Part shown: piece by piece, positions 1,077 through 59,387 of the stretch
Position numbering within the stretch: the stretch's first letter is position 1
Layout: the number at the start of each line of letters is the position of its first letter
Origin: Zootoca vivipara
Lineage: Eukaryota
Assembly (NCBI RefSeq): GCF_963506605.1
Contig: NC_083277.1
Coordinates: 17,670,001 to 17,734,000, forward strand
Direction: 5' to 3'
Length of the DNA: 64,000 nucleotides
The notes under the pieces: model-generated
The model's input: only the letters and a program-made list of their open reading frames with translations
What the model was told of the DNA's origin: nothing
Database searches by the model: none
Position numbers and translations under genes: made by a program

Positions 1077-1123
1077 CAGTTCTTCTAGGAGCGTTGTGGG
1101 TGGCTCTGAAAAGAGCCTTTGGG
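1077..1123 (-). terminator. Histone mRNA 3' stem-loop plus histone downstream element
   Basis: Minus strand reads CCCAAA-GGCTCTTTTCAGAGCC-ACCC (1098-1123), the canonical SLBP-binding stem-loop. Purine-rich AGAAGAACTG (HDE-like, 1077-1086) follows. Confidence 0.95.
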
Positions 1124-1175
1124 TCTGGGTATTTTGTCAGCGGCCCTGGTCCGGGCTATTGGCCTTTTGGCCTCA

Positions 1176-1649
1176 CTACACTGCAACGGGCGCGGTGCTG
1201 GCCTTGAGGGCCACTTTGGTGCCTTTGGCGGCCTTGGTCAGGGGTTTGGGAGCAGCCTTAGCGCTGGCCGCGCTATGCAGAGCTTCGGTCTTCTTGGGCA
1301 GCAAGACGGCGTGGATGTTGGGCAAGACTCCGCCCTGCGCTATGGTCACTCCGCCCAGCAGTTTGTTCAACTCCTCGTCGTTGCGCACCGCCAGCTGCAA
1401 GTGGCGCGGGATGATGCGGCTCTTCTTGTTGTCCCTGGCTGCGTTGCCGGCCAGCTCTAGGATCTCTGCGCTGAGGTACTCGAGCACAGCGGCCAAATAA
1501 ACGGGAGCTCCGCCGCCGATGCGCTCGGCGTAGTTTCCCTTGCGCAGCAGCCGATGGACTCTGCCCACGGGAAACTGCAGGCCGGCCCTGGAAGAGCGGG
1601 ACTTGGCCTTGGCCCGCGCCTTGCCACCTGTCTTGCCGCGACCAGACAT
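1176..1649 (-). CDS. H2A: Histone H2A variant, 157 aa, intronless, with extended Ala/Lys/Pro-rich C-terminal tail
   Basis: ATG at 1649: [40 protein letters not shown]...VLLPKKT, then [36 protein letters not shown]. Ends TAG TGA. TATA and CCAAT upstream, stem-loop downstream. Confidence 0.96.
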
Positions 1650-1720
1650 CTTCAAAACCTCCTGACTTCTATCTCGACCAAAGAACGAAAGGAATGCAGG
1701 TGCTTGGAGTGCTTTGAGCC

Positions 1721-1801
1721 TTTTATACGTTTCTTGAGCTAGCTGCGATTGGTCGAAGACATACAGGCCAATAGAAAAAAGGATTCTATTTCTAAACCAA
1801 T
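1721..1801 (-). promoter_or_regulatory. Histone-type promoter (TATA plus three CCAAT boxes)
   Basis: TATAAAA on minus strand at 1721-1727. CCAAT/ATTGG at 1748-1752, 1768-1772 and 1797-1801. Confidence 0.8.
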
Positions 1802-5129: not shown

Positions 5130-5650
5130 TTAGTAGCACAGCTGGAGGCAAGCTGATGGATCTACAATCCGGAAAAAGGGGAAAACTTCCTCCTCTTCAA
5201 AATCAATTGACTCGAAAATAAAGAGGCGGGTCTTATCTTCAGCATCATAAAAAGCCACAGTCCCTGCTTCGTAGTTCAACGAAACTTGGATTTGTGTTGG
5301 GCCCTCTTCTGGGTCCAAATAGGTAGGTGGTGAAGTCAGAGCTTTGAACTGATCATTGCGGCGAAAGCCCACTGCCCAGATCCCTTCATCAGGTTCAAAA
5401 TTAATTTCTCTATCCCTCTCCACAGACTCTCTGGCTACGCCCACAGCCCAATGATTGACACCCTCAACATCCACTGTCCAATAATGTTTCCCTGAGCTGA
5501 ATCCCCGCATTCCAAGTAGACAGCGGGCGTATTCAAACCTAATTGAACTGTAGGGGTAGTCCTGGCGTACATTTCCCCACCATACTGATTTTCCATCTGA
5601 AGACACAATATATCGGGGATGGGCTGTTTCCGGATCAAACACCACGTTTT
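5130..5650 (-). CDS. TRIM-A terminal exon (PRYSPRY/B30.2 domain)
   Basis: tgtttcag|AAAAC...[13 protein letters not shown]...[10 protein letters not shown]...WAVGVARES...FPFF...TAA. Confidence 0.93.
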
Positions 5651-8600
5651 CTGAAACACAACAGGAAGCAGAGTGGTAAAACACAGCAAACAAGACAAGC
5701 GCTTAACAGAATCCGTAACTTCCGTAAGGTAGTGCTCGCAAATTGCACATATTCTTTAGGAGGAGAGGAATGGAGAACCAAAGTAGGCCAATTCATACAA
5801 TCAAATTTGCATGGCGAGGATACAGGGTGAGAGTTGCAAGCTGGAGACTGTGTGTGCAGAAACAAAGATGAAATTTACATTCGCTGCTTCACCCACTTCT
5901 GCCTCTGTCCCCACCATGGCATGTGGCCCTTGGAAGGCTGCTTAGAAGAGAATGTGGCCCTTGAGCTGGAAAATGGTTAATGTAACCCTTTCCACAACAC
6001 TATTTCCCCCCTTGAGCTATTTACTTGCTGGGGTGGTGGTGGTTTAGACTTGAGTGACAGCGCAGGGACTAACTTGCTTCCTCCGCCCCTCAGCACTGCT
6101 GCCAGGGCCTCAGTCCAGTTGGATCTCCCCCTGCAGCAACTTTTATCTCAAGAGAGAAACATCAGGACATCAAATGCGGAAACTCTCCAACACCTGGCCT
6201 GTTTTCGCTCTCCGGAAATAGCAGCTTACTTCTTTTCCATTTTGATTTCACCGTGTTGGCATGAACATAGTCTAGGAGTAGAAAAGAGAATAGGGTAAAA
6301 CGTCCACTGTAAGGCTAACAAAAGAGACCTTGCAGCCTGCTTAATCATGCACCAATAAATTTTGTTGCTAATTAAACTACAGTCATACCTCTAGCTATGT
6401 ATGCTTCAGGTTGTGTACAACATGGGGTACGTACGCGCCGAACCCGAAAGTAACTGAACGGGTTACTCCCGGGTTCGGCGATTCGCGCATGCGCAGACAC
6501 GCCAAATGAAGTCACGTGTGTGCGCAGAAGCGCCAAATCGCGTGGGGAGCATGCACAGATTCGGCACTTCAGGGTAAGTACTGCTCTGGATGCATACCGG
6601 GCTGTACAAGAATCATTCACAATAATTATTGACTAATGCATGAATCATGTTCTTAAGGCTAACTGTCAGATGAACAACTGTTGTTTCTTTGCCTCCTTTC
6701 CAGGGGGCAGGAGAGGCATGGCATGCATTTGTTTAATTCGCCCCATTTGACGACCCAGTGTTGTTAGACCTGCAAACTTATCATCAAAAACTATCATCAA
6801 CGGTCAGGGAAAGACCCCTAGGCTCTGGCAAAAGAAAAAGAGGAGCCATAAATGAGGACAAGAGTTACGCTCAGGGCAAGAATGTACGTTACTCGTATGT
6901 AGGTCATTGGGTTAACTGCCCAAAGGTAGTAGTAAAGCAGGCAGTTTGTCATGGGATGGGCCAAGCGAGGGGACAGTCTCATTTTGTTGAATAGCTTGGA
7001 ACTCGGGGATGGGACACCTGGAGCCTTCCGGAAGTTGCTAGATTCCCATCACCACTGGCCACCCAAATATTTATCCCCATGCTCTCCCAATTTCCCTCCG
7101 TCTGAAAGCAGGCACCTGCGGCTCAGAAGCAGTGCCCAACCATGCCAGCCACTGGGGCCTGGCTTTCATATCCCACGGAAGGTTCTAGACCAGGCACCCC
7201 CAAACTGCGGCCCTCCAGATGTTTTGGGACTACAACTCCCATCATCCCTAGCTAACAGGACCAGTGGTCAGGGATGATGGGAATTGTAGTCCCAAAACAG
7301 CTGGAGGGGCGAGTTCAGGGATGCCTGATCTAGACCAAATGCTTCTCTCCCATTCCGGGATGGATGCAAACTCACCTGCTCTCAGACTGGCCGGTTTTGG
7401 ATGTTCTGGGGAGAGAAAGGTGAAAGGGAAACTCAGACAAAGTTTCAGATACCATATATGTTAAAAGAGTTCACTACTGTATATACCGGTGTGTGTGAAT
7501 GCTCTTCATTTTTGGAGGGAGAAACCAGAAAAGCTGCAATATTTAACCGCGGTCCCAATCATGCAGGTAAGATTTTAGCTAGTCATGCTGGGAGTTAAGG
7601 GGATACTTGTTTAATATTTACTGCTTCGTTCCCTATGACGGAAAGCAGTCTCGGAAAGAAAGTTTGAGTCTCCCAATACTGAGTAGTAGCTTTGGTTAAG
7701 CTGTCTTGTTATTGTGACTCACTACTCTGAATAACTCTACAGACTTTTTATACGGATCTGCTCTAATTACTTGAGGGTTAACCACAAACACATATCAAGA
7801 CCTGGCTTTGTGAACTGCCAATGTTGACTCCCATATATATAACTCTGCAGTGTCCCTTTTGAGCCTGAGCCTGACTGTCTCATGTCATTGTTATTATCCT
7901 AGGTAAAACATAATCTGTTACCTGAAAGCTGACGCTGCACCAGCTGTAGTTTTTCATTAAGCAACTCAACTTTCTTATTCAGATCAGCTTTGGGTTTCCC
8001 AGATATTTCTATGTTGCATCTGGAAAGAACATATGACTTAAAATAAAGCATTGCCCTGTATTGCTCCCCGATTCCTTTCCTGTTGAATGAACTAGCAATT
8101 GCTTCACTTTCATGGCATAATCTAGGGGTGCCCAAACTTTTTTCAAAGAGGGCCAGATTTGCTGAAGGCCGACCAAAAATTAAAGTTGTTGAGCTTTTTT
8201 TAAAAAAAAATTGCCGCAAGACATATACTACCACGGGGGCCGAATTAGGCCCCCAAAATAGACCTTGGGCAAACCTGGCATAATCAGCTGCCCGAGATGG
8301 CGGCCTCGATCTGCCTAATGGCAGGACTGTCCCAATCTTCCAAATAGCTCAGTTGGTTAGAGCATGGTGCTGATAACCTCAAGGTTGTCAGTTCAATCCC
8401 CATATGACACAGTTGCATATTCCTGCATTGCAAGGGGTGGATCCTTTCCAACTCTACAATTCTACGATTCTGTAAACAGGGTCTTACCTGCTCAGCAAGG
8501 GATCCATATCCTGGGGAAAAAGATAAATCGATCAGATCCACTTTTCAAAGTTCATTACAGTTCATTAAGTACTAACTCTTAATGCATTTTGCACATTTAC

Positions 8601-11600: not shown

Positions 11601-12591
11601 AACAAAACACTACATCCACAAATACAAAACAGGAAAAAACAGAAACAAATAAACAACAACAACAAAAATGCAAAATTTCATAAACTTAACCTCTTTTCTA
11701 ATCATTTTAAGGTGACATCCTCAAGCCACCCTTACTGCGATTCACTGCAAATCCTCTTTAGCAATTTCTATTTCTTAATCTATTATCATATTTTCTATCT
11801 ATACTTATTTTTAATTCTAAACCATTATCTATCATTTTATCATATTTTCCTTGATCCTAAAAGAAATTCCTAAACTACAGCATTATATGTATTTTGAGAT
11901 CCCTTTCATACTAATTAATATTACAATACTTCTTCAAATAAACTTTAAAACTCTTCCAATCTTCTTCCACCTACAATTCCCATCATCCCTGACCAATGGT
12001 CCTGTTAGCTCGGAATGATGGGAGTTGTAGTCCCAAAAACATCTGGAAGGCCGAGTTTGCCTATGCCTGATCAGGAGGGTCACCCTTTCCCCAACCCCTT
12101 CGTGCTCCAAATTCTCCCCAAACGAAGGGCGATATCGCTTACGGTACCTTAGCATCCTGGGAAGCCTCGTTGATGGGGAGGGTGGCGTGCGCTTTGTGCG
12201 CCCGGGATTCCCTGCAGACCAGGCAGATGAAGGCGCGGTCCTCTTGGCAGAAGAGCCGGAGGGCTTCGTAGTGCTTCCCGCACAACTTCGGCGCTTTCTT
12301 CTTGGACTCCCCTTGGGCTAGGCTTAGGCGCTGCTGGCGGAGGCGCTGTATCGCTTCGGCCATATTCGCCAAGTGCCTGTTGGGCCGGAGGTTGCCCCGG
12401 GGAAAAGCTATCCTGCACTGGGGGCAAGAGGAGAGGTCGCGGCCCGGCCCCTCCGGGCACTGGGCGATGCAGGGTCGGCAAAAGCTGTGCCCGCAGTCGA
12501 TGATCATCACCGGGTCGCGGAAGTAATCCAAGCAGATGGAGCAAGTCGCTTCGTCCTGGAGAGTTATGGAGGGGTCTCCGGCAGCGGCCAT
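5130..12591 (-). CDS. TRIM-A: RING-B-box2-coiled-coil-PRYSPRY E3 ligase (TRIM27/39/7-like), ~481 aa, 8 coding exons
   Basis: Exons 12591-12148, 11353-11255, 9327-9139, 8510-8488, 8019-7922, 7405-7376, 6271-6230, 5650-5130. All GT-AG, phases join into one ORF. C3HC4 RING, B-box2, and [17 protein letters not shown] motifs. Confidence 0.88.
6381..6608. mobile_element. Tigger/pogo-like (Tc1/mariner) MITE
   Basis: TA-CAGTCATACCTC / TA-CAGTGGTACCTC termini. Related copies at ~14900-15090, 23084-23245, 27370-27586, 31722-31950, 36303-36657, 38980-39180, 44550-44787 and 46406-46600. Confidence 0.7.
8123..8277. mobile_element. hAT MITE, 8-bp TSD GCATAATC
   Basis: Present in A and C (C copy ~33615-34248 carries a nested ~450-bp insertion). 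Empty site in B (~20795). Confidence 0.7.
8343..8471 (+). mobile_element. tRNA(Ile)-like-head SINE with CR1-type tail
   Basis: AGCTCAGTTGGTTAGAGCATGGTGCTGATAAC...GTTCAATCCC head and ccaactctacaattctacgattct tail. Paralogous copies at ~20860-21210 and ~34316-34695. Confidence 0.75.
9730..10300 (+). mobile_element. Non-autonomous Helitron with GC-rich interior
   Basis: A|TCCTATATAATAA...CACACTAG|T: 5'-TC and CTAG-3' ends in an AT target, no TSD. Empty site in TRIM-C at ~36161-36180. Confidence 0.75.
10362..10451. mobile_element. 90-bp hAT MITE (TIR CATAGCTGCCAAGTT)
   Basis: 8-bp TSD ACTCTGGC. Second copy at 56884-56973 with TSD AATGGGGG. Absent in TRIM-C. Confidence 0.85.
11556..11970 (-). 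mobile_element. L1/Tx1-like 3' fragment nested in a MITE
   Basis: AT-rich insert splitting the hairpin MITE, with duplicated ctacaaYtccc. The MITE is intact in TRIM-C. Confidence 0.55.
12148..12591 (-). CDS. TRIM-A exon 1 (RING + B-box2)
   Basis: [28 protein letters not shown]...CGHSFC..C...CPQCR...CGKH...CQED...CLVC...HKAH. Confidence 0.93.
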
Positions 12592-13811
12592 GGGTGTGCC
12601 TCCTTGCGCGCAAAATGCGCGGTCTGGGCAACGCGGGAGAAAGAGAGTCCCGCCCCGCAGCGGCAGAGGTAAATATGGGGTCCAAAGACGGAGGATCCCT
12701 ACTGTCTTCGCAGCCTGGATCCCTGCAAACCGAGGAGAAACGGAAAGGAGGACACGGGCGAAAGCGTAGACGCGGCACAACACCGAGACGAGCAAGACGC
12801 CAATCGGTCTGAAGGGGGCGTGGCGCTGAAGAGAATTGGGGCGAGGGGACAAAAAAAACAGAATACAGTAATGCACTTTTCAGGAAACGACTCACACCCA
12901 TGAAGATATGCTAATGGTAGTGCTTAAATGCCCTTTGATTGCACCACTTGTCTTTCTTACATTTGCAAGGTGGCATGTATCCGCCCTTCATCCGAAGATT
13001 TTACAATATAAAACCATGGGCGTGGGGGGAAATAGCATAGTAACGACTAAACGCAATGACCCGCCCACCCAAAGTTTGAAAGGTCAAAGGTTGTATTTGT
13101 ATTTATTGTTTAGCAGAGGACATGCCAGTTATTAAACTGGTAAGAGCAGATCCTACGTTTGATCTTGGCCAAAAAGCAGAAAATCTTCTCCCTTTAACCC
13201 TCACAACAATGGCAACACTCTGCCACGTGGGGATGGGAACCCAACCGTGTCCAAATTTTAAGAAGTGGTACCTGTGTTTGCCTTTTTCCTGCTCTCTGCT
13301 TCCTCTTTCTTAATCAGTTTGGGATCCAGTTGACTAGAGGACCAGGAGTGATGGGTGTCTGGGATCTTGTTAGGATATGTTTTATTTATATACTGCTTTT
13401 CACCCCCAAAACTCCCAAAAGTAGTGAACAACATTAAAACATGCTAATACAAAAGAAATATACTGTTTTGAATTGGGGGAGGGAGGAGCAGACTCCCCAT
13501 AATTCCTTGATTTAGGAAAAGTTTATCAGGGGTGTCCAAACTTTTTCAAAGAGAGCCAGATTTGATGAAGTGAACGTGTGATGGCTGACCAAAGTTGTTG
13601 ACCTTTTTTTAGGATTGAAGTTGAGCTCTCTTTTTTAGGATTTTACCCCAGGAAATAAACTGCCACAGGGGCTGGATTAGGCCAGTGAGCTGGATTAGAC
13701 CCCCGAAACGGACTTGGGACATGTCTGGTTAAAATTATCACGATTTGATTAAACATTGTGAAATACATGGAGGAGACCGTCTGGATTTAATTATGCTAAT
13801 GAGCTATTAAG

Positions 13812-16837: not shown

Positions 16838-17355
16838 TTAAGAGTACAGCTGGAGGCAAGTTGATGAATTGACGATCCGGAAAAAAGGAAAAACTACCTC
16901 CCCTTCAAAATCAATTGACCGGAAAATAAAGAGGCGGGTCTTATCTTCAGCATCATAAAAAGCCACAGACCCTGCTTCATAGTTCAACTTAACTTGGATC
17001 TGTGTTGGGACATCTTCTGTTTCCAAAGGGGTAGGAGGTGAAGTCAGAGCCTTCAACTGATCATTGCTAAACCCCACTGCCCAGATCCCCTCATCAGGTT
17101 CAAGATCAATTTTTCTATCCCTCTCCACAGACTCTTTGGCTACGCCCACAGCCCAATGGTCGACATCCTCAACATCCACCGTCCAATAATGTTTCCCAGA
17201 GTAGAATCCTCGCATTCCTAGTACACAGCGAGTGTATTCAAACCTATTTGAACTGTAGGGGTAGTCCTGACGGACCTTTCCCCACCATACTGATTTTCTA
17301 TCTGAAGACACAATATATCGGGGATGGGCTGTTTCCGGATCAAACACCACGTTTT
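16838..17355 (-). CDS. TRIM-B terminal exon (PRYSPRY)
   Basis: [14 protein letters not shown]...[10 protein letters not shown]...[17 protein letters not shown]. Confidence 0.93.
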
Positions 17356-19184
17356 CTGAAACACAACAGGAAGCAGGATGGTAAAGCAAACAAGACAAAC
17401 ACTTAACAGAATCAGTTACTTCCATAAGGTAGCCTACCGAGCTCGCAAATTGCATGCATTCTTTAGAAGGGGAGAAATGCAGAACCAATTAGGCCAATTC
17501 ATACAGCCAAATTTGCATGGCGAGAATACAAGCCACATGCAGGGTGAGAGTTGCAAGCTGGAGACTGCGTGTGCAGAAACAAAGATGAAATTTACATTCC
17601 CTGCTTCACCCACTTTTCCTTCTGGCCCCACACACCATGGCATGTGGCCCTTGGAAGGCTGTTTAGAAGAGAATGTGGCCCTTGAGCTGGAAAATGATTA
17701 ATTTAACCCTTTCCACACACCATGTCCCCCAATCTAAGTCCCCCCTCAGCTATTTACTTGCTGGGGTGGCGGCGGCCTGTTTTTGCTCTCCAGAAAAGAA
17801 GCTTACCCTTTATCCATTTCGCCGTGTTGGAATGAGAACGGTCTAGGAGTGAAAGAGAGAAAAAGGTAAAATATCCGCTGTAAGGCTAACAGAAGAGACC
17901 TTGCAGCATGTTTAATCATATACGAATGAAGCTTTGTTGTTAATTAAACTACAAAGAGCGAACACCCTTTCCCCCTCATTCAAGGTGCACGAGTTGCACA
18001 AGGAGGACTCCATAGAAATGGATAAGAATGTCCCCACTATTAGAGATTGGCAAGAGAAATTAATTAGCTATATTGATCTGGCCAAATTGACAAATTCGAT
18101 AAGGGGTGGTTCAAATAAAAAGTTTAATAATAATTGGGAAAAATTCGGAATATATTTGAAAGAACTTGGGTTTAAAACGAATATCTCGTAGAATTCCAAG
18201 AGGAAAATAAATGGAAGCAGTAGGAAAGTTAAAAACTTTGAAGCCAGGGAGGAAGTGAAGGGGAAGTCGATCTGGAAAAGAAGATGTGAATATTGATATT
18301 GAAATGAAGACGTAGAAGTTAGGCTGACAAATAAGGTAGAAGATAGGGTAAGTTTTATTTGAATGTCTTTGGTTGTTTATTTGTGTATTTCTTTTGTTGT
18401 TGTGTATTTTTGTTGGTATTTTAGTTGAATATGTTTTGTTTTATATTTATTTTAAATTCAATAAAGGCTATTTTAAAATTTTTAAAAAGAAGAAGAAAAG
18501 AAATGGATAAGAATGAGGAACTGGCCAGATTGACAATCCACTGATGTGATAATGATCTCAGGTGACCCTTCTCACCCCCACTTCATGAGTCTAACAGAAA
18601 GCTTTGCAAGGGGAATCACAAGGCTAGACTCACAGCTAATCACCAGGCCTTGCAAGGTGCTCAGTATGTCATATATAATTTGAAAGGTGTCAGTCCTGCA
18701 CGAAAAATTATCTTACTTCGTTACAATCCAAACTCTGGGGAAGGGTTATATAGTTCAGTGACAGATCATTTGCCCTGCATGCAGGAAAGTCTTGGAATCT
18801 GGGAGAGACTCCTCCCTGAAACCCCAGAGCTGCTGCCAGCCAGTGCAGACAATATTGAGCTAGATCAGGCACGTCCAACAGGTAGACAGTGATCTACCAG
18901 TAGGTTACTGGTAGATCACTGGCTCCCCCCCCAAGAAGCTCTTTTTTAATGTTTAAAAATAGCTTTATTGAAGTTAAAATGCATATACAAAATAGAACGT
19001 TAAACTAAACAACAATAACAAACATTAATGGTAAATAATATCAGTTAACCAAATAGCAAAATAGCAAAATAATGATTACAAAATATAAACAAAAAATTAA
19101 AGAGACAAAAATGAAACCCAAATATATATGAATCATAGTAAATCATAATAAATCATAAATAAATTATAAATAAATCATATATAA

Positions 19185-23100: not shown

Positions 23101-26100
23101 TCAAATGCCTTGGGAGTCGAACGAAGCATTTGTTCTGGTTTTCGAATGTTCTTTGGAACCCGAAAGTCCTGCAGCCTATCGGAAGTTGTGCCTTGGTTCC
23201 CGAACATTTTGGAAGTCAAACGTTTGACTTCCAAAGTAACACAGTAAAATATTTGAGGGGGCTGGGCATTGCCATTCAAATGGTATGTGTGCACTGCCTC
23301 ATGTGATCAATTATGTGGGACGGAGCTTAACTGTCCCCCCTCCAATATTTTATTCAAGTTGACACCCCTGCCAGCGAAAGATCTTTAGCTACGCATTTTG
23401 CTCCAGAAATCTATAATGTAACCATATTCACTTCTGAAATCCTGTGTTCATCCATTTCTATATCTGAAATGTTAACAAAGCATTTTGTAGGAGCCTTGAT
23501 ACACTTCAGCTTATGTTGTACGGGCCTACCTGTATTTAGCTGTGATTTGTTCTTAGTCTCGTGAATCCATGCCCATATATCCTTGAGCATTCTTGATATC
23601 CCCTTAGTCATACAATGATTTATCAACTATACACCTATATGAATATACACGGATTATTTTAGTCCCATAAGAGCCCACACAGGTATTCAGGGCTCCTGAA
23701 CTTGATGTCCTCCACATGTTTTGGATGACAACTCCCTGTGATCCTCAGATGAATCATAGAATCATAGAGTTGGAAGAGACCACAAGGGCCATCCAGTCCA
23801 ACCCCCTGCCAAGCAGGAAACACCATCAAAGCATTCTTGACATATGCCTGTCAAGCCTCTGCTTAAAGATCTCCAAAGAAGGAGACTCCACCACACTCCT
23901 TGGTAGCAAACTCCACTGCCGAACAGCTCTTACTGTCAGGAAGTTATTCCTAATGTTTAGGTGGAATCTTCTTTCTTATAGTTTGAATCCATTGCTCTGT
24001 GTCCGCTTCTCTGGAGCAGCAGAAAACAACCTTTCTCCCTCCTCTATATGACATCCTTTTATATATTTGAACATGGCTATCATATCACCCCTTAACCTTC
24101 TCTTCTCCACGCTAAACATACCCAGCTCCCTAAGCCGTTCCTCATAAGGCATCGTTTCCAGGCCTTTGACCATTTTGGTTGCCCTCTTCTGGACACCTTC
24201 CAGCTTGTCAGTATCCTTCTTGAACTGTGGTGCCCAGAACTGGACACAGTACTCCAGGTGAGGTCTGACCAGAGCAGAAGGTTGATATATATATTTTAAT
24301 AACAACAACAACAACTTCTCTACCGAGCTTGAGAGGAGCTGCAGTCCAGAACATCTGGAGAGCACAAAAAGGAGGCAGCTGCATTCAGTGGATGGCAAAC
24401 TGAGAGCTGCCTACCTTTGATTCCTGATTTTTTTTCTCAGTGTAACTTTTCTGCTTCATAATATCATCTCTCTCCTTCTTCAAGGTTGTTAACCAACTTT
24501 GGAGCTGATCCTAAAAGAAAAAGAAAAAATGCACTCAGCGCTCCCAGTACAATTAAAAGTGTTGGTGCTGACCTTTAAGGCCTAAACAGCCTCGGTCCAG
24601 TATACCTGAAGGAGTGTCTCCACCCCCATCGTTCAGCCCGGACACTGAGGTCCAGCACCGAGGGCCTTCTGGCAGTTCCCCCACTGAGAGAAGTGAGCTT
24701 ACAGGGAACCAGGCAGAGGGCCTTCTCAGTAGTGGCACCCGCCCTGTGGAACGCCCTCCCATCAGATGTCAAGGAGATAAACAACTATACGACTTTTAGA
24801 ATACATCTGAAGGCAACTCTGAACGTGCCAGCCAGTGGGGGAGTTTCATGCTCTGGCACCGGGGGCGGGGCTGACGCCCGTTCTGGGGGTGGACGCAGCT
24901 CCCAGAGGGGCAGGACACATGTTCCGGGGGTGGGGCACACGTTCCAGGGCTGTGGCAGGCCTCCCGGAGGGCCGTGGCGCGCCTCCCAGGGGTGGGGTTG
25001 CATCTCCCGGAGGGCCGTGGCATGCCTCCGGGGGCGTGACACGCCCCTACCTTCCTACGCCCCTGGTTCCAGCCCCCACACAACCAGACTTGGCCCAGTC
25101 CGGGAGCCACACAGGTGTCCAGCGATCCACCTCCTGTGGAGCTGTGGGCACGCTAATGCATCAGCAGAGTAACAGCAAGAAGCAAGGCTGTAGAGGCATT
25201 GGCATCACAAAAGTTCTTTATTTACAACAAATAAAAAACAACAACAACATGGCTAGTGTGAGCAGCAGCTTCACACGTCTGCTCTGTCCGAAAGCAGCAA
25301 ACAAAGAGAAGAACACAAAAGCACACAGGATGGAAGTACAGTGTATGAGTTCTGTTCCCACACTCCTATCAGGAATGTCAACAGTGGATGCAACAGCAAT
25401 GGAGATGCAACAGCAATGGAGAATGAAAATACTAACAAACCCTGTTTAGGGAAGTTTTTAATGTTTGATCTTTTACCGTATTTTTAATGTTCTTTTGGAA
25501 GCCACCGGGAGTGGCTGGGGAAACCCAGCCAGATGGGCGGGGTGTAAATAATAAATTATTATAATAAATTATTACTATTATTATAATATTTTGATTTAAT
25601 CAAAGGGTTTAGAAACCACTTTTTCACTAAATAAAAGCTTGGAGATGTTGGCACCTGAAGACCAACAGTATCTGGAGGGTCATTTCCCCCTTCCCTTTAG
25701 TCCTCAAAATTCTCCAAAAACGAACGGCAATTTCGCTTACCTTAGCATCCTGGGCAGCCTCGTCGATGGGGAGGACGGCGTGCGCTTTGTGCGCCCGGGA
25801 TTCCCTGCAGACCAGGCAAATGAAGGCGCGGTCCTCTTGGCAGAAGAGCCGGAGGGCTTCGTAGTGCTTCCCGCACAACTTCGGCGCTTCCTTCTTGGGC
25901 TCCCCTTCGGCCAGGGAGAGGCGCTGCAGGCGGAGGCGCTGTATCGCTTCGGCCATATTCGCCAAGTGCCTGTTGGGCTGGAGGTTGCCCCGGGGAAAAG
26001 CTATCCTGCACTGGGGGCAAGAGGAGAGGTCGCGGCCCGGCCCCTCCGGGCACTGGGCGATGCAGGGTCGGCAAAAGCTGTGCCCGCAGTCGATGATCAT

Positions 26101-26184
26101 CACCGGGTCGCGGAAGTAATCCAAGCAGATGGAGCAAGTCGCTTCGTCCTGGAGAGTTATGGAGGGGTCTCCGGCAGCGGCCAT
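16838..26184 (-). CDS. TRIM-B: RING-B-box2-coiled-coil-PRYSPRY E3 ligase, ~464 aa, 7 coding exons
   Basis: Exons 26184-25741, 24510-24415, 21992-21822, 21249-21227, 20694-20588, 17842-17807, 17355-16838. GT-AG, open frame (1395 nt). Confidence 0.88.
18014..18516 (+). mobile_element. L1/Tx1-like 3' fragment
   Basis: ORF2-end-like [20 protein letters not shown]...WEKF, A-rich tail, long TSD agaaatggataagaatg. Related fragments at ~22325-22925 (-) and 42148-43298 (+, TSD aggaaggctgtcttga). Confidence 0.65.
18737..19432 (+). mobile_element. Squam3-type SINE interrupted by a hAT MITE (~18866-19381, TSD AGCTAGAT)
   Basis: gctgctgccagccagtgcagacaatattgagctagat...gagctagatggactaatggtcc. Uninterrupted relative at ~62113-62273. 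Confidence 0.65.
20080..20118. repeat. (GT)n microsatellite
   Basis: Direct inspection. Others: (AT)n ~19189-19229 and ~48885-48928, (CT)n ~35077-35111. Confidence 0.95.
20931..21144. mobile_element. Palindromic hAT MITE (TIR TAGGGTTGCCA)
   Basis: Almost fully self-complementary 214 bp, 8-bp TSD GACACAGC. Confidence 0.9.
23751..24278 (-). mobile_element. CR1 LINE 3' fragment
   Basis: [39 protein letters not shown]...RLRGDMI (CR1 ORF2 C-terminus) plus (ATTCTATG)n tail. Present only in TRIM-B. Confidence 0.92.
24546..25560 (+). mobile_element. L2-clade LINE 3' end, split by a solo LTR
   Basis: [18 protein letters not shown] motif. Resumes at ~25438 (ctgtttagggaag...ccagatgggcgggg..aataataaattatt). 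Confidence 0.75.
24820..25437 (-). mobile_element. Solo LTR (~618 bp)
   Basis: Minus strand TGTTAG...GTTCA, flanking aactc/aaccc near-duplication, internal AATAAA (~25217-25222). Interrupts the L2 fragment cleanly. Confidence 0.65.
25741..26184 (-). CDS. TRIM-B exon 1 (RING + B-box2)
   Basis: 148 codons, AAG|GTAAGC donor. Confidence 0.93.
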
Positions 26185-26369
26185 GGGTCTGCCTACTTGC
26201 GCGCAAAATGCGCGGTCTGGGCAACGCGGGAGAAAGAGAATCCCGCCCCGCCGGGGTATAGGTAAATTTGGGGTCCAAAGACGGAGGATCCCTACTGTCT
26301 TCGCAGCCTGGATCCCTGCAAACCGAGGATCCCTGCAAACCGAGGAGGAACGGAAAGGAGGACACGGGC

Positions 26370-26381
26370 GAAAGCGAAAGC
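26370..26381 (+). promoter_or_regulatory. IRF-element-like GAAAGCGAAAGC in TRIM-B promoter
   Basis: GAAANNGAAA consensus next to CCAAT and GC boxes. Same motif at 38422-38433 (TRIM-C). Confidence 0.5.
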
Positions 26382-27051
26382 GAGGACGCAGCGCAACACG
26401 GAGACGAGCCAATCGGTCTGAAGGGGGCGTGGCGCTGAAACGAAGTGGGAAAGTGCCGCGAGGGGACAGAAAACAGAATACAGTACTGTACTGTAATGCA
26501 CTTTTCAGGAAATGACTCACACCCTTGAAGGTATGCCTGATGGTAGTGCTTACTTGCGCTTTGATTGCACCACTTGTCTTTCTTACTTTTGCATCTCGTT
26601 TTTCCCTTAAAGGCGGCATTTATTAAAACTCTACTCCACCCTTCATCCGAAGATTTTGCAATATAAAACCTCGAAAAAATAATATAGCATAGTAATGACT
26701 AAAAGCAATGACCCGCCCACCCAAAGTTTGACAGGTCAAAGGTTGTATTTATTGTTTAGCAGAGGACATGCCAGTTATTAAACTGGTAAGAACAGATACC
26801 AGTTTGATCTTGGCCAAAAGGCAGAAAAGCTTCTCCCCTTAACCCTCACAACAACCCTGTTTGGTAGGTTTAGGCTGAGCAGCCATGGCAACACTCTGGC
26901 ACGTGGGGATGGGAACCCAACCGTGTCCAAATTTTAAGAAGTGGTACCTGTGTTTGCCTTTTTAAGGTCTTAGTTATATAATAAATGTTCATAAATGTAT
27001 AAGGCAAACACGTACATAAAAATATAAAACCAGTACATAAAAATATAAACC

Positions 27052-30453: not shown

Positions 30454-30974
30454 TTAGTAGCACAGCTGGAGGCAAACTGATGGATCTACAATCCGGAAAA
30501 AGGGGAAAACTTCCTCCCCTTCAAAATCAATTGACTCGAAAATAAAGAGGCGGGTCTTATCTTCAGCATCATAAAAAGCCACAGTCCCTGCTTCGTAGTT
30601 CAACGAAACTTGGATTTGTGTTGGGCCCTCTTCTGGGTCCAAATAGGTAGGTGGTGAAGTCAGAGCTTTGAACTGATCATTGCGGCTAAAGCCCACTGCC
30701 CAGATCCCTTCATCAGGTTCAAAATTAATTTCTCTATCCCTCTCCACAGACTCTCTGGCTACGCCCACAGCCCAATGGTTGACACCCTCAACATCCACCG
30801 TCCAATAATGTTTCCCTGAGCTGAATCCCCACATTCCAAGTAGACAGCGGGCGTATTCAAACCTAATTGAACTGTAGGGGTAGTCCTGGCGGACCTTTCC
30901 CCACCATACTGATTTTCCATCAGAAGACACAATATATCGGGGATGGGCTGTTTCCGGATCAAACACCACGTTTT
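30454..30974 (-). CDS. TRIM-C terminal exon (PRYSPRY)
   Basis: Five amino-acid differences from the TRIM-A exon. Confidence 0.93.
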
Positions 30975-33900
30975 CTGAAACACAACAGGAAGCAGAGTGG
31001 TAAAACACAGCAAACAAGACAAACGCTTAACAGAATCCGTAACTTCCGTAAGGTAGTGCTCGCAAATTGCACATATTCTTTAGGAGGAGAGGAATGCACA
31101 ACCAAAGTAGGCCAATTCATACAATCAAATTTGCATGGCGAGGATACAGGGTGAGAGTTGCAAGCTGGAGACTGTGTGTGCAGAAACAAAGATGAAATTT
31201 ACATTCACCCACTTCTGCCTCTGGCCCCCCACACCATGGCACGTGGCCCTTGGAAGGCTGTTTAGAAGAGAATGTGGCCCTTGAGCTAGAAATGTAACCT
31301 TTTCCACAACACCATTTTCTCCAATCTAAGTCCCCCTTGAGCTATTTACTTGCTGGGGGGTGGTGGTGGTTTAGACTGGAGTGACAGCACAGGGACTAAC
31401 TTGCTTCCTCCGCCCCTCAGCACTGCTGCCAGGGCCTCAGTCCAGTTGGATCTCCCCCTGCAGCAGCTTTTATCTCAAGAGAGAAACGTCAGGACATCAA
31501 ATGCTGGAACTCCCCAACCCCTGGCCTGTTTTTGCTCTCCAGAACTAGAAGCTTACCTCTTTTCCATTTACCTCTTTTCCATTTTGATTTCACCGTGTTG
31601 GCATCAACATAGTCTAGGAGGAGAAAAGAGAATAGGGTAAAACGTCCACTGTAAGGCTAACAGAAGAGACCCTGCAGCCTGTTTAATCATGCACCAATGA
31701 AATTTTGTTGCTAATTAAACTACAGTCATACCTCTAGTTACGTATGCTTCAGGTTGTGTACGACACGGGGTACGTACGCGCTGAACCCGGAAGTAACTGA
31801 ATGTGTTACTCCCGGGTTCAGCGATTCGAGCATGTGCAGACACGCCGAATGAAGTCACGTGTGTGTGCAGAAGCGCCAAATCGCGCAGGGAGCATGCGCA
31901 GATTCGGCTCTTCAGGGTAAGTACTGCTCTGGATGCATACGGAGCTGTACAAGAATCATTCACAATAATTATTGACTAATGCATGAATCATGTTCTTAAG
32001 GCTAACTGTCAGATGAACAACTGTTGTTTCTTTGCCTCCTTTCCAGGGGGCAGGAGAGGCATGGCATGCATTTGTTTAATTCGCCCCATTTGACGACCCA
32101 GTGTTGTTAGACCTGCAAACCTATCATCAAAAACTATCATCAACGGTCAGGGAAAGACCCCTAGGCTCTGGCAAAAGAAAAAGAGGAGACATAAATGAGG
32201 ACAAGAGTTACGCTCAGGGCAAGAGTGTACGTTACTCGTATGCAGGTCATTGGGTTAACTGCCCAAAGGTAGTAGCAAAGCAGGCAGTTTGTCAAGGGAT
32301 GGGCCAAGCGAGGGGACAGTCTCATTTTGTTGAATAGCTTGGAACTCAGGGATGGGACACCTGGAGCCTTCCGGAAGTTGCTAGATTCCCATTAACCACT
32401 GGCCACCCAAATATTTATCCCCATGCTCTCCCATTTTTTACCTGCGTCACATACTGGATAGTGAAAATCAGAAGTATATCTGTGCTGATTGAGCTGCTGT
32501 GGCACACCTGCTGGATTCAAAAACACAACAGTCACCCCATTCCTCTCTGATCAGTTAATATCAGTCTAACACGCACGTCTCAACATGCACATGAGGCCAA
32601 ACAAAAGGCCTGGCAGGCTGCCTCTCCCAATTTCCCTCCGTCTGAAAGCAGGCACCTGCTGCTCAGAAGCAGTGCCCAACCATGCCAGCCACTGGGGCCT
32701 GGCTTTCATATCCCACGGAAGGTTCTAGACCAGGCATCCCCAAACTCGGCCCTCCAGATGTTTTGGGACTACAACTCCCATCATCCCTAGCTAACAGGAC
32801 CAGTGGTTAGGGATGATGGGAATTGTAGTCCCAAAACAGCCTTTCTCTCCCATCGGACTGGCCAGTTTTGGATGTTCTGGGGAGAGAAAGGTGGAAGGTG
32901 AAACTCAGACAAAGTTTCAGATACCATATATGTTAAAAGAGTTCACTACTGTATATACCGGTGTGTGTGAATGCTCTTCATTTTTGGAGGGAGAAAACCA
33001 GAAAAGCTGCAATATTTAACCGCGGTCCCAATCGTGCAGGTAAGATTTTAGCTGGTCATGCTGGGAGTTAAGGGGATACTTGTTTAATATTTACTGCTTC
33101 GTTCCCTATGAGGGAAAGCAGTCTCGGAAAGAAAGTCCGAGTCTCCCAATACTGAGTAGTAGCTTTGGTTAAGCTGTCTTTGTTATTGTGACTCACTACT
33201 CCGAATAACTCTACAGACTTTTTATACGGATCTGCTCTAATTACTTGAGGGTTAAACACAGACACAGATCAAGACCTGGCTTTGTGAACTGCCAATATTG
33301 ATATGCACAATGGGGATTCCCATATATATAACTCTGTAGTGTCCCTTTTGAGCTTGACTGACTTATGTGATTATTATTATCCTAGGTAAAACATAATCTG
33401 TTACCTGAAAGCTGACGCAACTTGGTCTGCACCAGCTGTAGTTTTTCATTAAGCAACTCAACTTTCTTATTCAGATCAGCTTTGGGTTTCCCAGATATTT
33501 CTATGTTGCATCTGGAAAGAACATATGACTTAAAATAAAGCATTGCCCTGTATTGCTCCCCGATTCCTTTCCTGTTGAATGAACTAGCAATTGCTTCACT
33601 TTCATGGCATAATCTAGGGGTGCCCAAACTTTTTTCAAAGAGGGCCAGATTTGCTGAAGGCCGACCAAAGATTAAAGTTGTTGAGCTTTTTTAAACAATT
33701 CCCCCCGCCAAGGTACTTGGAAACCTGGTACTGAACCCAAGTATAAGAGCTGCTGGAGGGTTAACAGCTCTGCTATGATGCCTGGGGCTGGGAGGAGGGA
33801 GCAAGGGGGAGTTCCTACATCCGGGAATCTGTCTTTGTTCTCTGTATACTGTTGTTGGTTTCGTTTTTCAACCGGGGCAGCCATGGAATGCTGCAGTCCC

Positions 33901-35115: not shown

Positions 35116-38100
35116 TGCATTTTCGCCATCAGTTTCTGCTTCTTCGTATTTGCCATCAAATTTATCATGGACTTCTAAAAAAAATGAAGGTTCAGCTGGA
35201 CTGAAACAAATCTGTTGTACCATTTTCACATGTCATAGTCCAACAATTTTTTAAAAATTTTTCCCCATTTTTTGTTTGTTTGTTGGGGAGGGGAACAACA
35301 ACAAAAAAGGCTTCGGGAGAGGAATGTCCGTCCACCCCTAATTTCCCTGGGCTTTCACATCTACTAGTGCAATCTTACCTGCAGGAGTTCAAAGGCAGAC
35401 TTCAGGCACTTCTCCTCTACCTCTTTAATCAGTTTGGCGAGATGAGAGCTGCGCTCTGAGAATTCACTGGCTATTTTGTCGATTGACTCCATGATCTCTG
35501 CACACGCAAGTAGCAGTTCCCAGTTTCCCGCAACTTGATCCCTGATGCTTCCCACACGATTCTGCAAAGAGCAGAGGACAAGAGAGACCAAATTCAGTGT
35601 GCTGTTGTGATTCCATCTCCAGGGAAAAAGGCACAAACGGGGGGGAAAGAGCCAGTTGTGCTTAGTTTCACCAGGGCTTATTCACTCCACCATAACAAGT
35701 AGGAGGTGTAACCTAGTGCAAAGGTCAGTAGGGTGGACATTTTCCCCCAGTGCTTTTGGGGGGGGGGCGCCTTCCCAAAGGCATCTGCATCCCAAGGCCA
35801 GCTTTCTGATTCATTCCCAAACCCCCCATTAGTCTCCTGGCAATAGCCTTTCGCCCACTTGTTTGCTATTACTGACCTGGAGAAGAACATTACTTCCTCC
35901 TGTTTTTCAATCCACATTTTTCCAAGGTTGTCCCACTATCTTATCTGATACCTTCAGTTAAGCTATACTAGTAATAATAAAGGTAAAGGTAATAAAGGTA
36001 ACAAGGGTAAAAATAATAAAGGTAAAAAGTGGAAGGACGTGTGGATCCAGAATTGGCCTCCATATTCACTTACGGACCCATTGTTAAAACCGTGTTTATG
36101 GAAGACAATATTACTCGGATATGAGTGATCGCCAAAGAAGAAGAAGAAAAATAAGAAGACTAGTAATAATAATAATAATTTATTTATATCCCACCCATCT
36201 GGCTGTGTTTCCCTAGACACTCTGGCCGGCTCCCAATCGAATATTAAAAACACAATACATAGGAGGTGTCAACTCCTAGGGGTTTTCACCCCCCAAGAAA
36301 GTACAGTGGTACCTCGGTTTACAACACAATTGCTTCCGGAAGTCTGTACAGGTTACATAGGAAGTCTGTAACCTGAAGCGTACTTAACCTGAAGCGAACT
36401 TTCCCACTGAAAGTAATGGAAAGTGGATTAATCCGTTCCAGACGGTCCGTGGAGTACTCAACCTGAAGCATACATAACCCGAGGTATGAGTGTATTTGGT
36501 TCCGGCAGTCCGTACTTAACCTGATGCATACTTAACCTGAAGCGAACTTTCCAATTGAAAGTAATGGAAAGTGGATTAATCCGTTCCAGACAGGTCCGTG
36601 GAGTACTTAAACTGAAAATACTCAAACCAAGGCATACTTAAACCAAGGTATGACTGTATTTCAGGGGGCTATCCCCACCCCAAAGTTGATGGGCATTGCA
36701 TTCAAATGGGTGTGTGTGCACTGCGTCATGTGATCAATTATGCAGGGCGAGGCTTACCTGTCCCCCCTCCAATGTTTTATTCAAGTTGGCACCCCCACCA
36801 GCGAAAGGTCTTTAGCTATGCATTTTGCTCCAGAAATCTATAATGTAACCATATTCACTTCTGAAATCCTGTGTTCATCCATCTCTATATCTTAAATGTT
36901 ACGAAAGCGTTTTGTAGGTGCCTTGATACACTTCAGCTTATTTTGTACGGACCTATCTGCATTTAGCTGTGATTTGTTGTTAGTCCCATGCATCCATGCC
37001 CATATAACCTTGAACATTCTTGAGTTTCCCTTAGTCGTACAATGTATAGCATTGTATATGAATATACACAGGTTATTTTAGTCATTTTAGTCCGATGAGA
37101 GCACACACAGATATTCAGGGCTCCGGAACTTGATGCGCTCCACATGTTTGGGATGACAACTCCCTGTGAGTCTCAGATGAAGATCGATATATACATTTAA
37201 ATAACAAGAACAACTCCTCTAACCAGCCTGAGAGAGCTGCAGTCCAGAATAATAATACTACCTTTATTGTCAATGTACAACCTGTGTACAATAAAATTAA
37301 CTGAGCACAAAAAGGAGGCAGCTACGTTCAGTGGATGGCAAACCAGGAGCCTGCCTACCTTCATTTCTCTCTCACTGCACCCTTCAATCCTCTTCAAAAT
37401 TTCATCTCTCTCCTTCTTCAAGGTTGTTAGGCAACTTTGGAGCTGATCCTAAAAGGAAAAAAAAGGCATTCAGCGCTTATACCATTTATTAAAAGATTTA
37501 GAAACCACTCTTTCACTAAGAGCTCTCATAGTAGTATACAAGTAAAACTGTAAATAAAATCCTGGGGATGGTGGCACCTGAAGACCAGCATTATCTGGAG
37601 CAGACATAAGCAAACCCGGCCCTCCAGATCCTTTGGGACTACAATTCCCATCATCCCTGACCAATGGTCCTGTTAGCTAGGTATGATGGGAGTTGTAGTC
37701 CCAAAACATCTGGAGCGCCGAGTTTGCCTATGCCTGATCAGGAGGGTCACCCTTTCCCCAACCCCTTCGTGCTCCAAATTCTCTCCAAACGAAGGGCGAT
37801 TTCGCTTACCTTAGCATCCTGGGCAGCCTCGTCGATGGGGAGGGTGGCGTGCGCTTTGTGCGCCCGGGATTCCCTGCAGACCAGGCAGATGAAGGCGCGG
37901 TCCTCTTGGCAGAAGAGCCGGAGGGCTTCGTAGTGCTTCCCGCACAACTTCGGCGCTTCCTTCTTGGGCTCCCCTTCGGCTAGGCTTAGGCACTGCAGGC
38001 GGAGGCGCTGTATCGCTTCGGCCATATTCGCCAAGTGCCTGTTGGGCCGGAGGTTGCCCCGGGGAAAAGCTATCCTGCACTGGGGGCAAGAGGAGAGGTC

Positions 38101-38253
38101 GCGGCCCGGCCCCTCCGGGCACTGGGAGATGCAGGCTCGGCAAAAGCTGTGCCCGCAGTCGATGATCATCACCGGGTCGCGGAAGTAATCCAAGCAGATG
38201 GAGCAAGTCACTTCGTCCTGGAGAGTTATGGAGGGGTCTCCGGCGGCGGCCAT
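30454..38253 (-). CDS. TRIM-C: RING-B-box2-coiled-coil-PRYSPRY E3 ligase, ~469-474 aa, close paralog of TRIM-A
   Basis: Exons 38253-37810, 37448-37359, 35561-35379, 34732-34710, 33511-33405, 31613-31572 (or -31557), 30974-30454. GT-AG, open frame. Confidence 0.88.
34335..34578. mobile_element. hAT MITE, TSD GGTTAGAG
   Basis: CAGGGGT...ACCCCTG termini. Other hAT MITEs with clean 8-bp TSDs at 49721-50070 (CTATAGTC), 50786-50911 (CACGTACT) and 62780-63030 (GTTTACTC). Confidence 0.85.
37810..38253 (-). CDS. TRIM-C exon 1 (RING + B-box2)
   Basis: 148 codons, AAG|GTAAGC donor. Confidence 0.93.
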
Positions 38254-58964: not shown

Positions 58965-59387
58965 ATGGCTGCGCCGAACCCAGAGAAAAGCCTCCAGGAT
59001 GAAGCCACCTGTTCCATCTGCCTGGATTATTTCCAGAACCCGATGATGGTCATCGACTGTGGGCACAACTTCTGCCGGGACTGCATTGCCCAGTGCTGTG
59101 AAGGGTCCATTGCCAACGTGTTCTCCTGCCCGCAGTGCAGAAAACCCTTCCCTTGGCAGAACCTGCGGCCAAACAGGCACCTGTGGAATATCGTTGAGCT
59201 GGCCATGCAGTTCAGCATGCGGCGAGCCAAGGAGTCGGGAGAACAGAAGCTCTGCAAGAAACACCAGGAGCCCCTGAAGCTCTTCTGCGAATACGATCAA
59301 ACGTCCATCTGCGTGGTTTGTGACCGGTCCAAGCTGCATAAATATCACAATGTGATTCCTATAGAGGAGGCTGCTCAGGTTTACCAG
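58965..59387 (+). CDS. TRIM-E first coding exon (RING + B-box2)
   Basis: [40 protein letters not shown]...CPQCR...CKKH...HKYH; CAG|GTAACG donor. Confidence 0.93.

What the first reader, a model, noticed from the sequence alone, without database searches (positions are those of the whole stretch)
1098..1801. Long-tailed, stem-loop-type H2A variant with an H1-like C-terminal extension and no SQ(E/D)Y
Seen: an intact intronless 157-aa H2A with TATA/CCAAT promoter, perfect stem-loop and HDE, so probably expressed. After LLPKK it has 37 residues ([37 protein letters not shown], 6 Lys, Ala/Pro-rich), versus about 10 in canonical vertebrate H2A. The core has H2A.X-like features (KTGGK, AKSR, LLGGV) and further changes (ERIGGG, YLSAE, KKSRII, PNIHAV). 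The acidic patch and the K118/K119 ubiquitination site are kept. Known: the H2A tail lies at the DNA entry/exit site, and basic extensions (plant H2A.W, macroH2A linker) bind linker DNA and compact chromatin. Inference: a possibly undescribed squamate H2A variant with a built-in linker-histone-like tail, perhaps germline or embryo specific. It fits none of H2A.X, H2A.Z, macroH2A, H2A.J or the short H2As.
Basis: partly seen in the sequence, partly recalled or inferred. Interest (0 to 1): 0.82.

Follow-up and report, generated by a model that had tools for sequence, protein, structure and literature searches.

The report
Long-tailed H2A histone of lizards and snakes
This is a real, intact histone H2A gene whose protein has about 27 extra residues at its end; geckos, skinks, lizards, snakes and probably the tuatara have all kept this tail, but I found no paper describing it, and where it is expressed and what it does are still untested.

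Summary
Window 1179-1649 (minus strand) encodes an intact, intronless 157-aa H2A. It has a TATA box, CCAAT boxes and an Rfam-scored histone 3' stem-loop. After LLPKK come 37 residues, against 10 in canonical H2A.

It is not a recent stop loss. Proteins with the same tail plan exist in every major squamate group I could sample: geckos, skinks and cordylids, lacertids, an amphisbaenian, iguanians and snakes. A tuatara H2A carries a probably homologous tail.

The 122-residue core is identical from lacertids to snakes, including the variant-specific I44, G46, S60, S77 and H113. The tail keeps its length, four lysines at fixed spacing and a terminal PVAV(Q) motif.

It fails the defining tests for H2A.X, H2A.W, macroH2A, H2A.J, H2A.Z and the short H2As. 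Pipelines call it "histone H2A-like". Nine full-text searches found no description.

"H1-like" is too strong: the tail is only 16% lysine, with net charge +5. The linker-DNA mechanism is inference.

The scan had already noted this multi-copy variant on the overlapping upstream window (s1-850965).

The parts
1179..1649 (-). Complete intronless coding sequence of the 157-aa long-tailed H2A
   Evidence: Translation; ORF list; Pfam Histone and Histone_H2A_C; the exact protein is on record on a 123,560,741-bp contig that also carries a Zootoca vivipara RefSeq H2A-like protein.
1290..1649 (-). Core, residues 1-120: N-tail, histone fold, docking domain, acidic patch, K119/K120
   Evidence: Residues 1-122 are identical in 14 lacertid, amphisbaenian and snake proteins apart from one I80V in one Lacerta copy. 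Acidic patch and K119/K120 are invariant in 26 orthologues. About 94% identical to human H2A chains in the PDB.
1179..1289 (-). C-terminal tail, residues 121-157: short conserved start (TEALH), variable Ala/Ser/Gly linker, then a conserved block with four spaced lysines and the terminal PVAV motif
   Evidence: K131, K142, K145, K149 and H125 are at least 90% conserved. Shuffle tests. GC3 0.70.
1173..1178 (-). Tandem stops TAG TGA. Other squamates have a terminal Gln where Zootoca has TAG.
   Evidence: for the DNA; for the ...PVAVQ ends of the relatives. The CAG-to-TAG origin is inferred.
1077..1122 (-). Histone 3' UTR stem-loop (SLBP-binding element) with flanks
   Evidence: Rfam RF00032, 34.4 bits (cut-off 34), E = 3.3e-6, full model 1-46.
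1720..1727 (-). TATA box (TATAAAAG), 78 nt upstream of the ATG
   Evidence: Read directly; not tested functionally.
1748..1801 (-). Three CCAAT-type boxes: CCAAT 1752-1748, inverted 1772-1768 and 1801-1797
   Evidence: Read directly; not tested functionally.

Best explanation
Shown: this is one copy of a small tandem family that encodes a lepidosaur-specific H2A variant. The gene has the build of a replication-dependent histone gene: no intron, TATA and CCAAT boxes, and a 3' stem-loop. Its core is almost canonical, with the acidic patch, docking domain and ubiquitination lysines intact, but it carries five fixed substitutions (I44, G46, S60, S77, H113). Its C-terminus runs 37 residues past LLPKK. 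Core and tail have been kept under purifying selection since at least the gecko/other-squamate split. The tail probably dates to the split from the tuatara. Inferred: the protein pairs with H2B and forms ordinary nucleosomes. The H2A C-terminus leaves the particle next to the dyad and the entering and leaving DNA. So the two extra tails per nucleosome, each about +5 in charge and long enough to reach the linker, would lie on linker DNA or beside H1. This would modestly protect extra DNA and stabilise or compact chromatin, as described for plant H2A.W, the macroH2A linker and (as proposed) the bdelloid H2Abd variants. The strictly kept hydrophobic end (K-VAV-KP..AP-VAV-Q) suggests that the tip also docks on a specific partner or surface. 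I put about 0.9 on the identity and conservation, and about 0.35-0.4 on the linker-DNA mechanism.
For: Gene anatomy. Conservation: the cluster of 54 sequences includes Podarcis, Lacerta, Zootoca, Rhineura, Pantherophis, Naja/Notechis, Protobothrops and Python. Further full-length matches come from Paroedura, Heteronotia, Eublepharis, Sphaerodactylus, Tiliqua, Hemicordylus, Sceloporus, Anolis and Sphenodon. Tail lengths are 31-52 residues in all 26 proteins, with net charge +2 to +7. Tail similarity beyond composition: Zootoca vs snake z = 11.2, vs gecko z = 11.0, tuatara vs gecko or snake z = 4.4-4.6. Signature sites appear stepwise: S77 in tuatara and all squamates; I44, G46 and H113 in squamates; S60 in non-gecko squamates. 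In the tree the squamate variants are set apart from canonical H2A and H2A.X (89/91), with the tuatara protein next to them (91/70). The tail keeps coding-type GC3. Mechanism by analogy: a review and the primary paper say that extended H2A C-tails protect or may contact linker DNA and lie close to the H1 site.
Against: No nucleotide sequences of orthologues could be fetched, so there is no dN/dS. The tail is only 13-16% Lys in most species and has no S/TPKK motif, so its affinity for DNA may be low. Anolis tails have diverged strongly (z = 1.6-2.7). The AlphaFold model was poor throughout (mean pLDDT 44.8) and says nothing about the tail. No squamate canonical H2A or H2A.X was in the tree, so the sister relationship is unresolved.
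Confidence: 0.6

Rival explanations
1. The tail mainly acts as a docking peptide rather than a DNA-binding arm. The conserved hydrophobic end (K-VAV-KP..AP-VAV-Q) would recruit a chaperone, reader or modifier, or fold back on the nucleosome surface. The lysines would be secondary or would be modification sites.
For: The best-kept part of the tail is not its charge but the alternating hydrophobic pattern and the terminal PVAV(Q), which is the same from geckos to snakes. Lysine density is low for a DNA-binding tail. A paper reports that the H2A.X linker region binds 53BP1, a precedent for H2A tails acting as protein-binding peptides.
Against: No partner is known or predictable from sequence. There is no match to any solved chain. 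Anolis replaces PVAV by SLAV/TLAV and tuatara by PIEAR, so the motif is not universal.
Confidence: 0.25
2. It is a germline, oocyte or early-embryo H2A. Its stem-loop mRNA would be stored or used in rapid cleavage cycles, like the Xenopus H2A.X-F, fish H2af1o and sea-urchin cleavage-stage histones that I recall from memory. This concerns where it acts and is compatible with either tail mechanism.
For: It sits in a solitary tandem H2A-only array with no H2B partner within 8 kb. Earlier scan notes (unchecked) place the canonical clusters elsewhere. No indexed RNA run holds the stretch, which is weak evidence and would fit restricted expression. The bdelloid long-tailed H2Abd1 is highly expressed in embryos.
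Against: No expression data at all. Stem-loop mRNAs are lost from poly(A) libraries whatever the tissue, so the blank means little.
Confidence: 0.3
3. It descends from H2A.X, as a duplicate or as the orthologue itself, and lost the SQ(E/D)Y end. It may act in place of H2A.X in squamates.
For: T7, S17 and G99-G100 are as in H2A.X. PDB H2A.X chains score the same as canonical H2A (240.4 vs 240.7 bits), and the alignment runs on to residue 139. One paper reports that no gamma-H2AX antibody stained spermatocytes of four reptiles.
Against: The tails show no convincing similarity to two H2A.X tails (z from -1.1 to 2.7). No SQ(E/D)-hydrophobic end occurs in any of the 26 proteins. The tail starts with TE.LH, as canonical TESHH does. 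The reptile panel in that paper also included a turtle, so an antibody mismatch is the simpler reading. Whether squamates have a separate SQEY H2A.X could not be tested here.
Confidence: 0.1
4. It is a recent stop loss, a frameshift into the 3' UTR, or a decaying copy of a canonical H2A gene, so the tail would be meaningless.
For: Such read-through models do exist: frog models P0229 and P0178 translate straight through the stem-loop.
Against: The tail is in frame and of similar length in 26 proteins from all major squamate clades. It shows residue-level conservation (z = 11) and coding-type GC3. The stem-loop lies well beyond the stop.
Confidence: 0.02

Closest known systems
Bdelloid rotifer H2Abd / H2Abd1 / H2Abd2 (Van Doninck et al. 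2009, PMC2642717)
   Same: The core is close to canonical. The C-terminal tails run 28-43 residues past LLPKK, there is no SQ(E/D)-hydrophobic end, and the genes have 3' stem-loops. Only a few short motifs in the tails are conserved. This is the closest formal parallel.
   Different: The lineage is unrelated and the tail sequences are unrelated. In bdelloids these variants replace canonical H2A and H2A.X altogether, and H2Abd1 has an SPKK-like motif. Here there is no SPKK motif, and whether canonical H2A coexists was not tested by me (only unchecked scan notes say so).
Plant H2A.W
   Same: An extended C-terminal tail on an otherwise H2A-like core. Its tail protects 10-15 bp of linker DNA, which is the model for the mechanism proposed here.
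   Different: H2A.W is defined by a KSPKK minor-groove motif and is specific to plants. No S/TPKK occurs in any of the 26 tails.
macroH2A (its basic linker)
   Same: A basic stretch after the H2A docking domain that protects about 10 bp of extranucleosomal DNA and aids condensation.
   Different: macroH2A has a macro domain and a diverged histone fold. This protein is 157 aa, has only the Histone and Histone_H2A_C domains, and its core is about 94% identical to canonical H2A.
H2A.X
   Same: The N-terminal 38 residues and G99-G100 are as in H2A.X, the tail is longer than canonical, and the gene has a stem-loop. Scores against PDB H2A.X and canonical H2A chains are equal.
   Different: It lacks the defining SQ(E/D)-hydrophobic C-terminus and has no SQ or TQ in the Zootoca tail. 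It lies in a tandem array among TRIM genes rather than as a solitary gene.
Canonical replication-dependent H2A
   Same: The gene architecture (intronless, TATA/CCAAT, stem-loop), the start of the tail (TE.LH vs TESHH) and about 94% core identity.
   Different: Five substitutions fixed across lineages, 27 extra C-terminal residues, and no divergently transcribed H2B partner within 8 kb.

Membership tests
Histone H2A (core family) | Histone fold plus H2A C-terminal docking segment | tested here: met
   Pfam PF00125 (7.7e-15) and PF16211 (1.5e-20); 211 PDB H2A sequences match with E down to 6.5e-83.
Histone H2A (core family) | Acidic patch (E57, E62, E65, D91, E92, E93, numbering with Met1) and K119/K120 | tested here: met
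   All are invariant in the 26-sequence alignment A3.
Replication-dependent-type histone gene | Intronless gene ending in the conserved 3' stem-loop instead of a poly(A) signal | tested here: met
   Uninterrupted ORF; Rfam RF00032 at 34.4 bits against a cut-off of 34.
Replication-dependent-type histone gene | S-phase-coupled expression and 3' end cleaved after the stem-loop | not testable with these tools
H2A.X | C-terminal SQ(E/D) followed by a hydrophobic residue at the very end | tested here: not met
   The protein ends ...STAPVAV. None of the 26 orthologues has the motif. The other two reading frames of the tail DNA do not hold it either.
H2A.W | S/TPKK-type minor-groove motif in the extended C-terminal tail | tested here: not met
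   No SPKK or TPKK in any tail listed; the definition is taken.
macroH2A | Macro domain after a basic linker | tested here: not met
   157 aa with only the two histone Pfam domains.
H2A.J | Short C-terminus with an SQ motif (from memory: ...TESQKTKSK) | tested here: not met
   No SQ in the tail. The PDB H2A.J match stops at residue 124. The defining sequence is recalled from memory, not fetched.
H2A.Z | Diverged L1 loop, docking domain and extended acidic patch (about 60% identity to canonical H2A, from memory) | tested here: not met
   The core is about 94% identical to canonical H2A chains.
Short H2As (H2A.B, L, P, Q) | Truncated docking domain and C-terminus, reduced acidic patch | tested here: not met
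   Full docking domain, full acidic patch and a lengthened C-terminus; the definition is taken.
Lepidosaur long-tailed H2A (the group defined here) | S77 and a tail of at least 30 residues with lysines spaced +3, +3, +4; in squamates also I44, G46, H113 and a terminal PVAV(Q) | tested here: met
   Anolis departs at positions 44-46 (VGS/ISS) and at the end (SLAV/TLAV). Tuatara has only S77 and the lysine block.

The most novel reading that the evidence does not exclude
Lepidosaurs have a nucleosome-intrinsic linker-binding system. In this reading, the long-tailed H2A is made from stem-loop mRNA in the germline or in early cleavage. It occupies the entry/exit DNA, partly replaces or competes with linker histone H1, and recruits a partner through its conserved PVAVQ tip. 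This would be a vertebrate counterpart of plant H2A.W that arose independently about 250 million years ago.
Probability: 0.15. Interest if true: 0.85.

Novelty: new variant of a known kind. Interest (0 to 1): 0.62.

Why it matters
New histone variant families in vertebrates are rare, and almost all known ones were defined in mammals. This one has a core frozen across lizards and snakes and a tail kept in every squamate clade sampled. That means selection has acted on a specific chromatin function that mammals and birds appear to lack. It gives a natural vertebrate test of how lengthening the H2A C-terminus at the DNA entry/exit site changes linker DNA protection, H1 binding and compaction, a question studied so far mainly in plants (H2A.W) and with macroH2A. 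It also matters for annotation, because pipelines file these genes as plain "histone H2A-like". Finally, any squamate chromatin proteomics or gamma-H2AX work needs to know that this abundant-looking paralogue exists.

Tried and rejected
So I got no orthologous DNA, no synteny, no dN/dS, and no view of the upstream copies in this genome.

So there is no expression evidence.

3. The full-length word search was swamped by more than 100 gene models of 250-274 aa that hold two H2A domains. I got round this with a query cut to residues 20-157, which lowers the length ceiling.

4. The tail-only search of solved structures found nothing at E up to 10, so there is no sequence link to H1, H2A.X or anything solved.

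5. AlphaFold2 on the 26-sequence alignment gave mean pLDDT 44.8. It is uninformative, and I made no fold search.

6. The promoter/terminator scan uses bacterial consensus sequences and is irrelevant here.

7. I did not run the exhaustive representative search. At 50% clustering these proteins fall in with canonical H2A, so a tail query would most likely miss them, and the operators asked that it be used sparingly.

8. Frog and bird "long H2A" hits (P0229, P0178, P0241) were rejected as relatives. The frog tails are translated stem-loops, and the bird tail is unrelated.

9. H2A.X ancestry of the tail was considered and not supported.

Full report
**What is there**

On the minus strand, window 1179-1649 is an uninterrupted 157-codon reading frame. 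It translates to a complete histone H2A and is followed by two stops, TAG TGA. Pfam finds the core histone fold and the H2A C-terminal segment. The protein matches 211 distinct H2A sequences of solved structures, about 94% identical over residues 1-128.

Rfam places the histone 3' stem-loop family at 1077-1122 on the same strand, at 34.4 bits against a cut-off of 34. Upstream, on the gene's strand, I read TATAAAAG at 1727-1720, CCAAT at 1752-1748 and two inverted CCAAT boxes at 1772-1768 and 1801-1797.

After LLPKK there are 37 residues (12 Ala, 6 Lys, 7 Ser/Thr, 3 Pro, net charge +5), against 10 in canonical H2A. The other two frames of the tail DNA contain stops and no SQEY.

**Is the tail real?**

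The opposite is found.

- A word search with the tail alone hit one cluster of 54 sequences. Its listed members come from Podarcis (three species), Lacerta, Zootoca, the amphisbaenian Rhineura, and the snakes Pantherophis, Naja/Notechis, Protobothrops and Python.
- The window's exact protein is on record on a contig of 123,560,741 bp. That contig also carries a second, slightly different Zootoca vivipara copy, so the window is most likely Zootoca vivipara and the gene is at least duplicated there.
- A second search, with the query cut to residues 20-157 to escape fused double-H2A models, added four geckos (Paroedura, Heteronotia, Eublepharis, Sphaerodactylus), a skink (Tiliqua, two copies), a cordylid (Hemicordylus), iguanians (Sceloporus, Anolis carolinensis, A. 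sagrei) and the tuatara.

Residues 1-122 are identical in all 14 lacertid, amphisbaenian and snake proteins, apart from one I80V in one Lacerta copy. That identity includes the five departures from canonical H2A. Tails are 31-52 residues long in all 26 proteins. H125, K131, K142, K145 and K149 are at least 90% conserved. The end ...(A)PVAV(Q) is the same from geckos to snakes.

Against 3000 composition-preserving shuffles, the Zootoca tail aligns to the snake tail at z = 11.2 and to a gecko tail at z = 11.0. In the window's own gene, tail GC3 is 0.70, core GC3 is 0.83, and flanking GC is 0.45-0.46. A recent stop loss or a decaying copy is excluded.

**How old, and from what?**

The tuatara protein P0179 has a 39-residue tail with the same lysine spacing (+3, +3, +4) and the word SKATK shared with geckos. 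It aligns to gecko and snake tails at z = 4.4-4.6, with 0.0003-0.001 of shuffles reaching the score.

The signature sites appear in steps that follow the accepted phylogeny:
- S77 is present in the tuatara and all squamates.
- I44, G46 and H113 are present in squamates.
- S60 is present in all squamates except geckos.

In a maximum-likelihood tree the squamate proteins are set apart from canonical H2A and H2A.X rows (89/91), and the tuatara protein is next to them (91/70). Copies within a species or genus group together, which points to local duplication or gene conversion. This tree lacks squamate canonical H2A and H2A.X, which I could not fetch, so the sister group is open.

The tail starts TE.LH, like canonical TESHH. 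It shows no convincing similarity to two H2A.X tails (z from -1.1 to 2.7). Extension of a canonical-type H2A is therefore the more likely origin. From general knowledge, the gecko split is roughly 190-200 million years old and the tuatara split roughly 250.

**Context**

No H2B or other histone ORF lies within 8 kb, and the window holds only one stem-loop. The rest of the window is an array of TRIM-type exons: RING and B-box exons, and PRY/SPRY exons.

An earlier first-stage note of this scan (s1-850965) reports several copies of the same variant just upstream of the window start. I could check that only indirectly. Zootoca has two distinct proteins on one contig. Lacerta agilis has three on one contig, with consecutive accession numbers. 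Other unchecked notes place the ordinary histone clusters about 100 Mb away on the same sequence piece or on other pieces of the genome.

**How it probably works**

Shown: the histone fold, docking domain, acidic patch and K119/K120 are intact, and the gene has replication-dependent-type signals.

Inferred: it forms ordinary nucleosomes with H2B. The H2A C-terminus emerges near the dyad and the entry/exit DNA, which is established structural knowledge and is also stated. So two extra tails of about +5 charge each could lie on linker DNA or next to H1. This is the mechanism described for H2A.W (10-15 bp extra protection) and the macroH2A linker (about 10 bp), and it is the one proposed for the bdelloid H2Abd variants.

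I give this about 0.35-0.4. The tail is only 13-16% Lys in most species and has no S/TPKK motif, so "H1-like" is too strong. The most conserved feature is the alternating hydrophobic pattern K-VAV-KP..AP-VAV-Q, which fits a docking peptide as well as, or better than, a DNA-binding arm. The tail alone matches no solved chain at E up to 10. The structure prediction was too poor to use.

**Comparison with known families**

The protein fails the defining feature of each named variant:
- H2A.X: no SQ(E/D)-hydrophobic end.
- H2A.W: no S/TPKK.
- macroH2A: no macro domain.
- H2A.J: no SQ.
- H2A.Z: the core is canonical-like.
- Short H2As: nothing is truncated.

The closest formal parallel is the bdelloid rotifer set. 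Those variants have tails 28-43 residues past LLPKK, a canonical-like core, stem-loop genes and no SQ motif, but they arose independently and their sequences are unrelated.

RefSeq and UniProt hold these proteins as "histone H2A-like" or "Histone H2A". Nine full-text searches of open papers and preprints found no description of a reptile long-tailed H2A. A 2021 review of variants lists only H2A.W, bdelloid H2As and macroH2A as extended-tail forms. Subscription-only literature was not searched.

**What could not be done**

- The run search found DNA holders of the same organism and three 2026 RNA runs kept as raw reads, but no indexed RNA holder.
Expression is therefore untested.
- Whether squamates keep a separate SQEY H2A.X is also open. 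One paper notes that no gamma-H2AX antibody stained spermatocytes of four reptiles, but that panel included a turtle, and an antibody mismatch is the simpler reading.

**Verdict**

This is a real, intact and strongly conserved lepidosaur-specific H2A variant gene. It is known to annotation pipelines but apparently undescribed in the literature. I class it as a new variant of a known kind, extended-tail H2A. The H1-like mechanism and the germline guess remain hypotheses.

Noticed in passing
window 1173-1178 (minus strand): Both Zootoca copies end ...APVAV and are followed by TAG TGA. Most other squamate orthologues end ...APVAVQ. The last Gln codon seems to have become a stop in the Zootoca lineage, leaving the old stop right behind it.
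   Followed up: partly
proteins P0229 (Ascaphus) and P0178 (Rhinoderma): These frog 'long H2A' gene models contain KALLRA(T/A)H, which is the histone stem-loop read as protein. They are read-through models, not a tail family.
   Followed up: partly
proteins P0016-P0135: More than 100 fish, shark and hagfish database models of 250-274 aa, often named 'H2AX-like', match the query with roughly twice a single H2A's score. They look like two neighbouring H2A genes fused in one model, and they swamp full-length H2A searches.
   Followed up: no
window 13078-13186 (-) and 26723-26833 (-): Two partial U2 snRNA matches just above Rfam's cut-off (47.6 and 48.7 bits against 46). Each covers about 110 nt of a 192-nt model and lies about 100-200 nt upstream of a TRIM RING/B-box ORF, so they belong to a repeated unit.
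   Followed up: no
window 5130-62092: An array of TRIM-type genes. Near-identical PRY/SPRY exons lie at 5130-5693, 16838-17488, 30454-31017 and 41205-41843. RING/B-box exons lie at 12139-12876, 25627-26619, 37747-38253, 53955-54500 and 58965-59417. I checked three of them in Pfam. The scan already holds a note on this array (s1-853973).
   Followed up: partly
paper PMC9597255: The authors state that no antibody against gamma-H2AX gave any staining in spermatocytes of four reptile species. Whether reptile H2A.X C-termini differ from the mammalian epitope would be worth checking.
   Followed up: no
window 51055-52019: Long ORFs on both strands are made of Ser/Phe/Leu/Pro repeats (SFLPSFLP...) or, on the other strand, Lys/Glu/Gly/Arg repeats. 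This is a simple-sequence tract, not a gene, as far as I looked.
   Followed up: no
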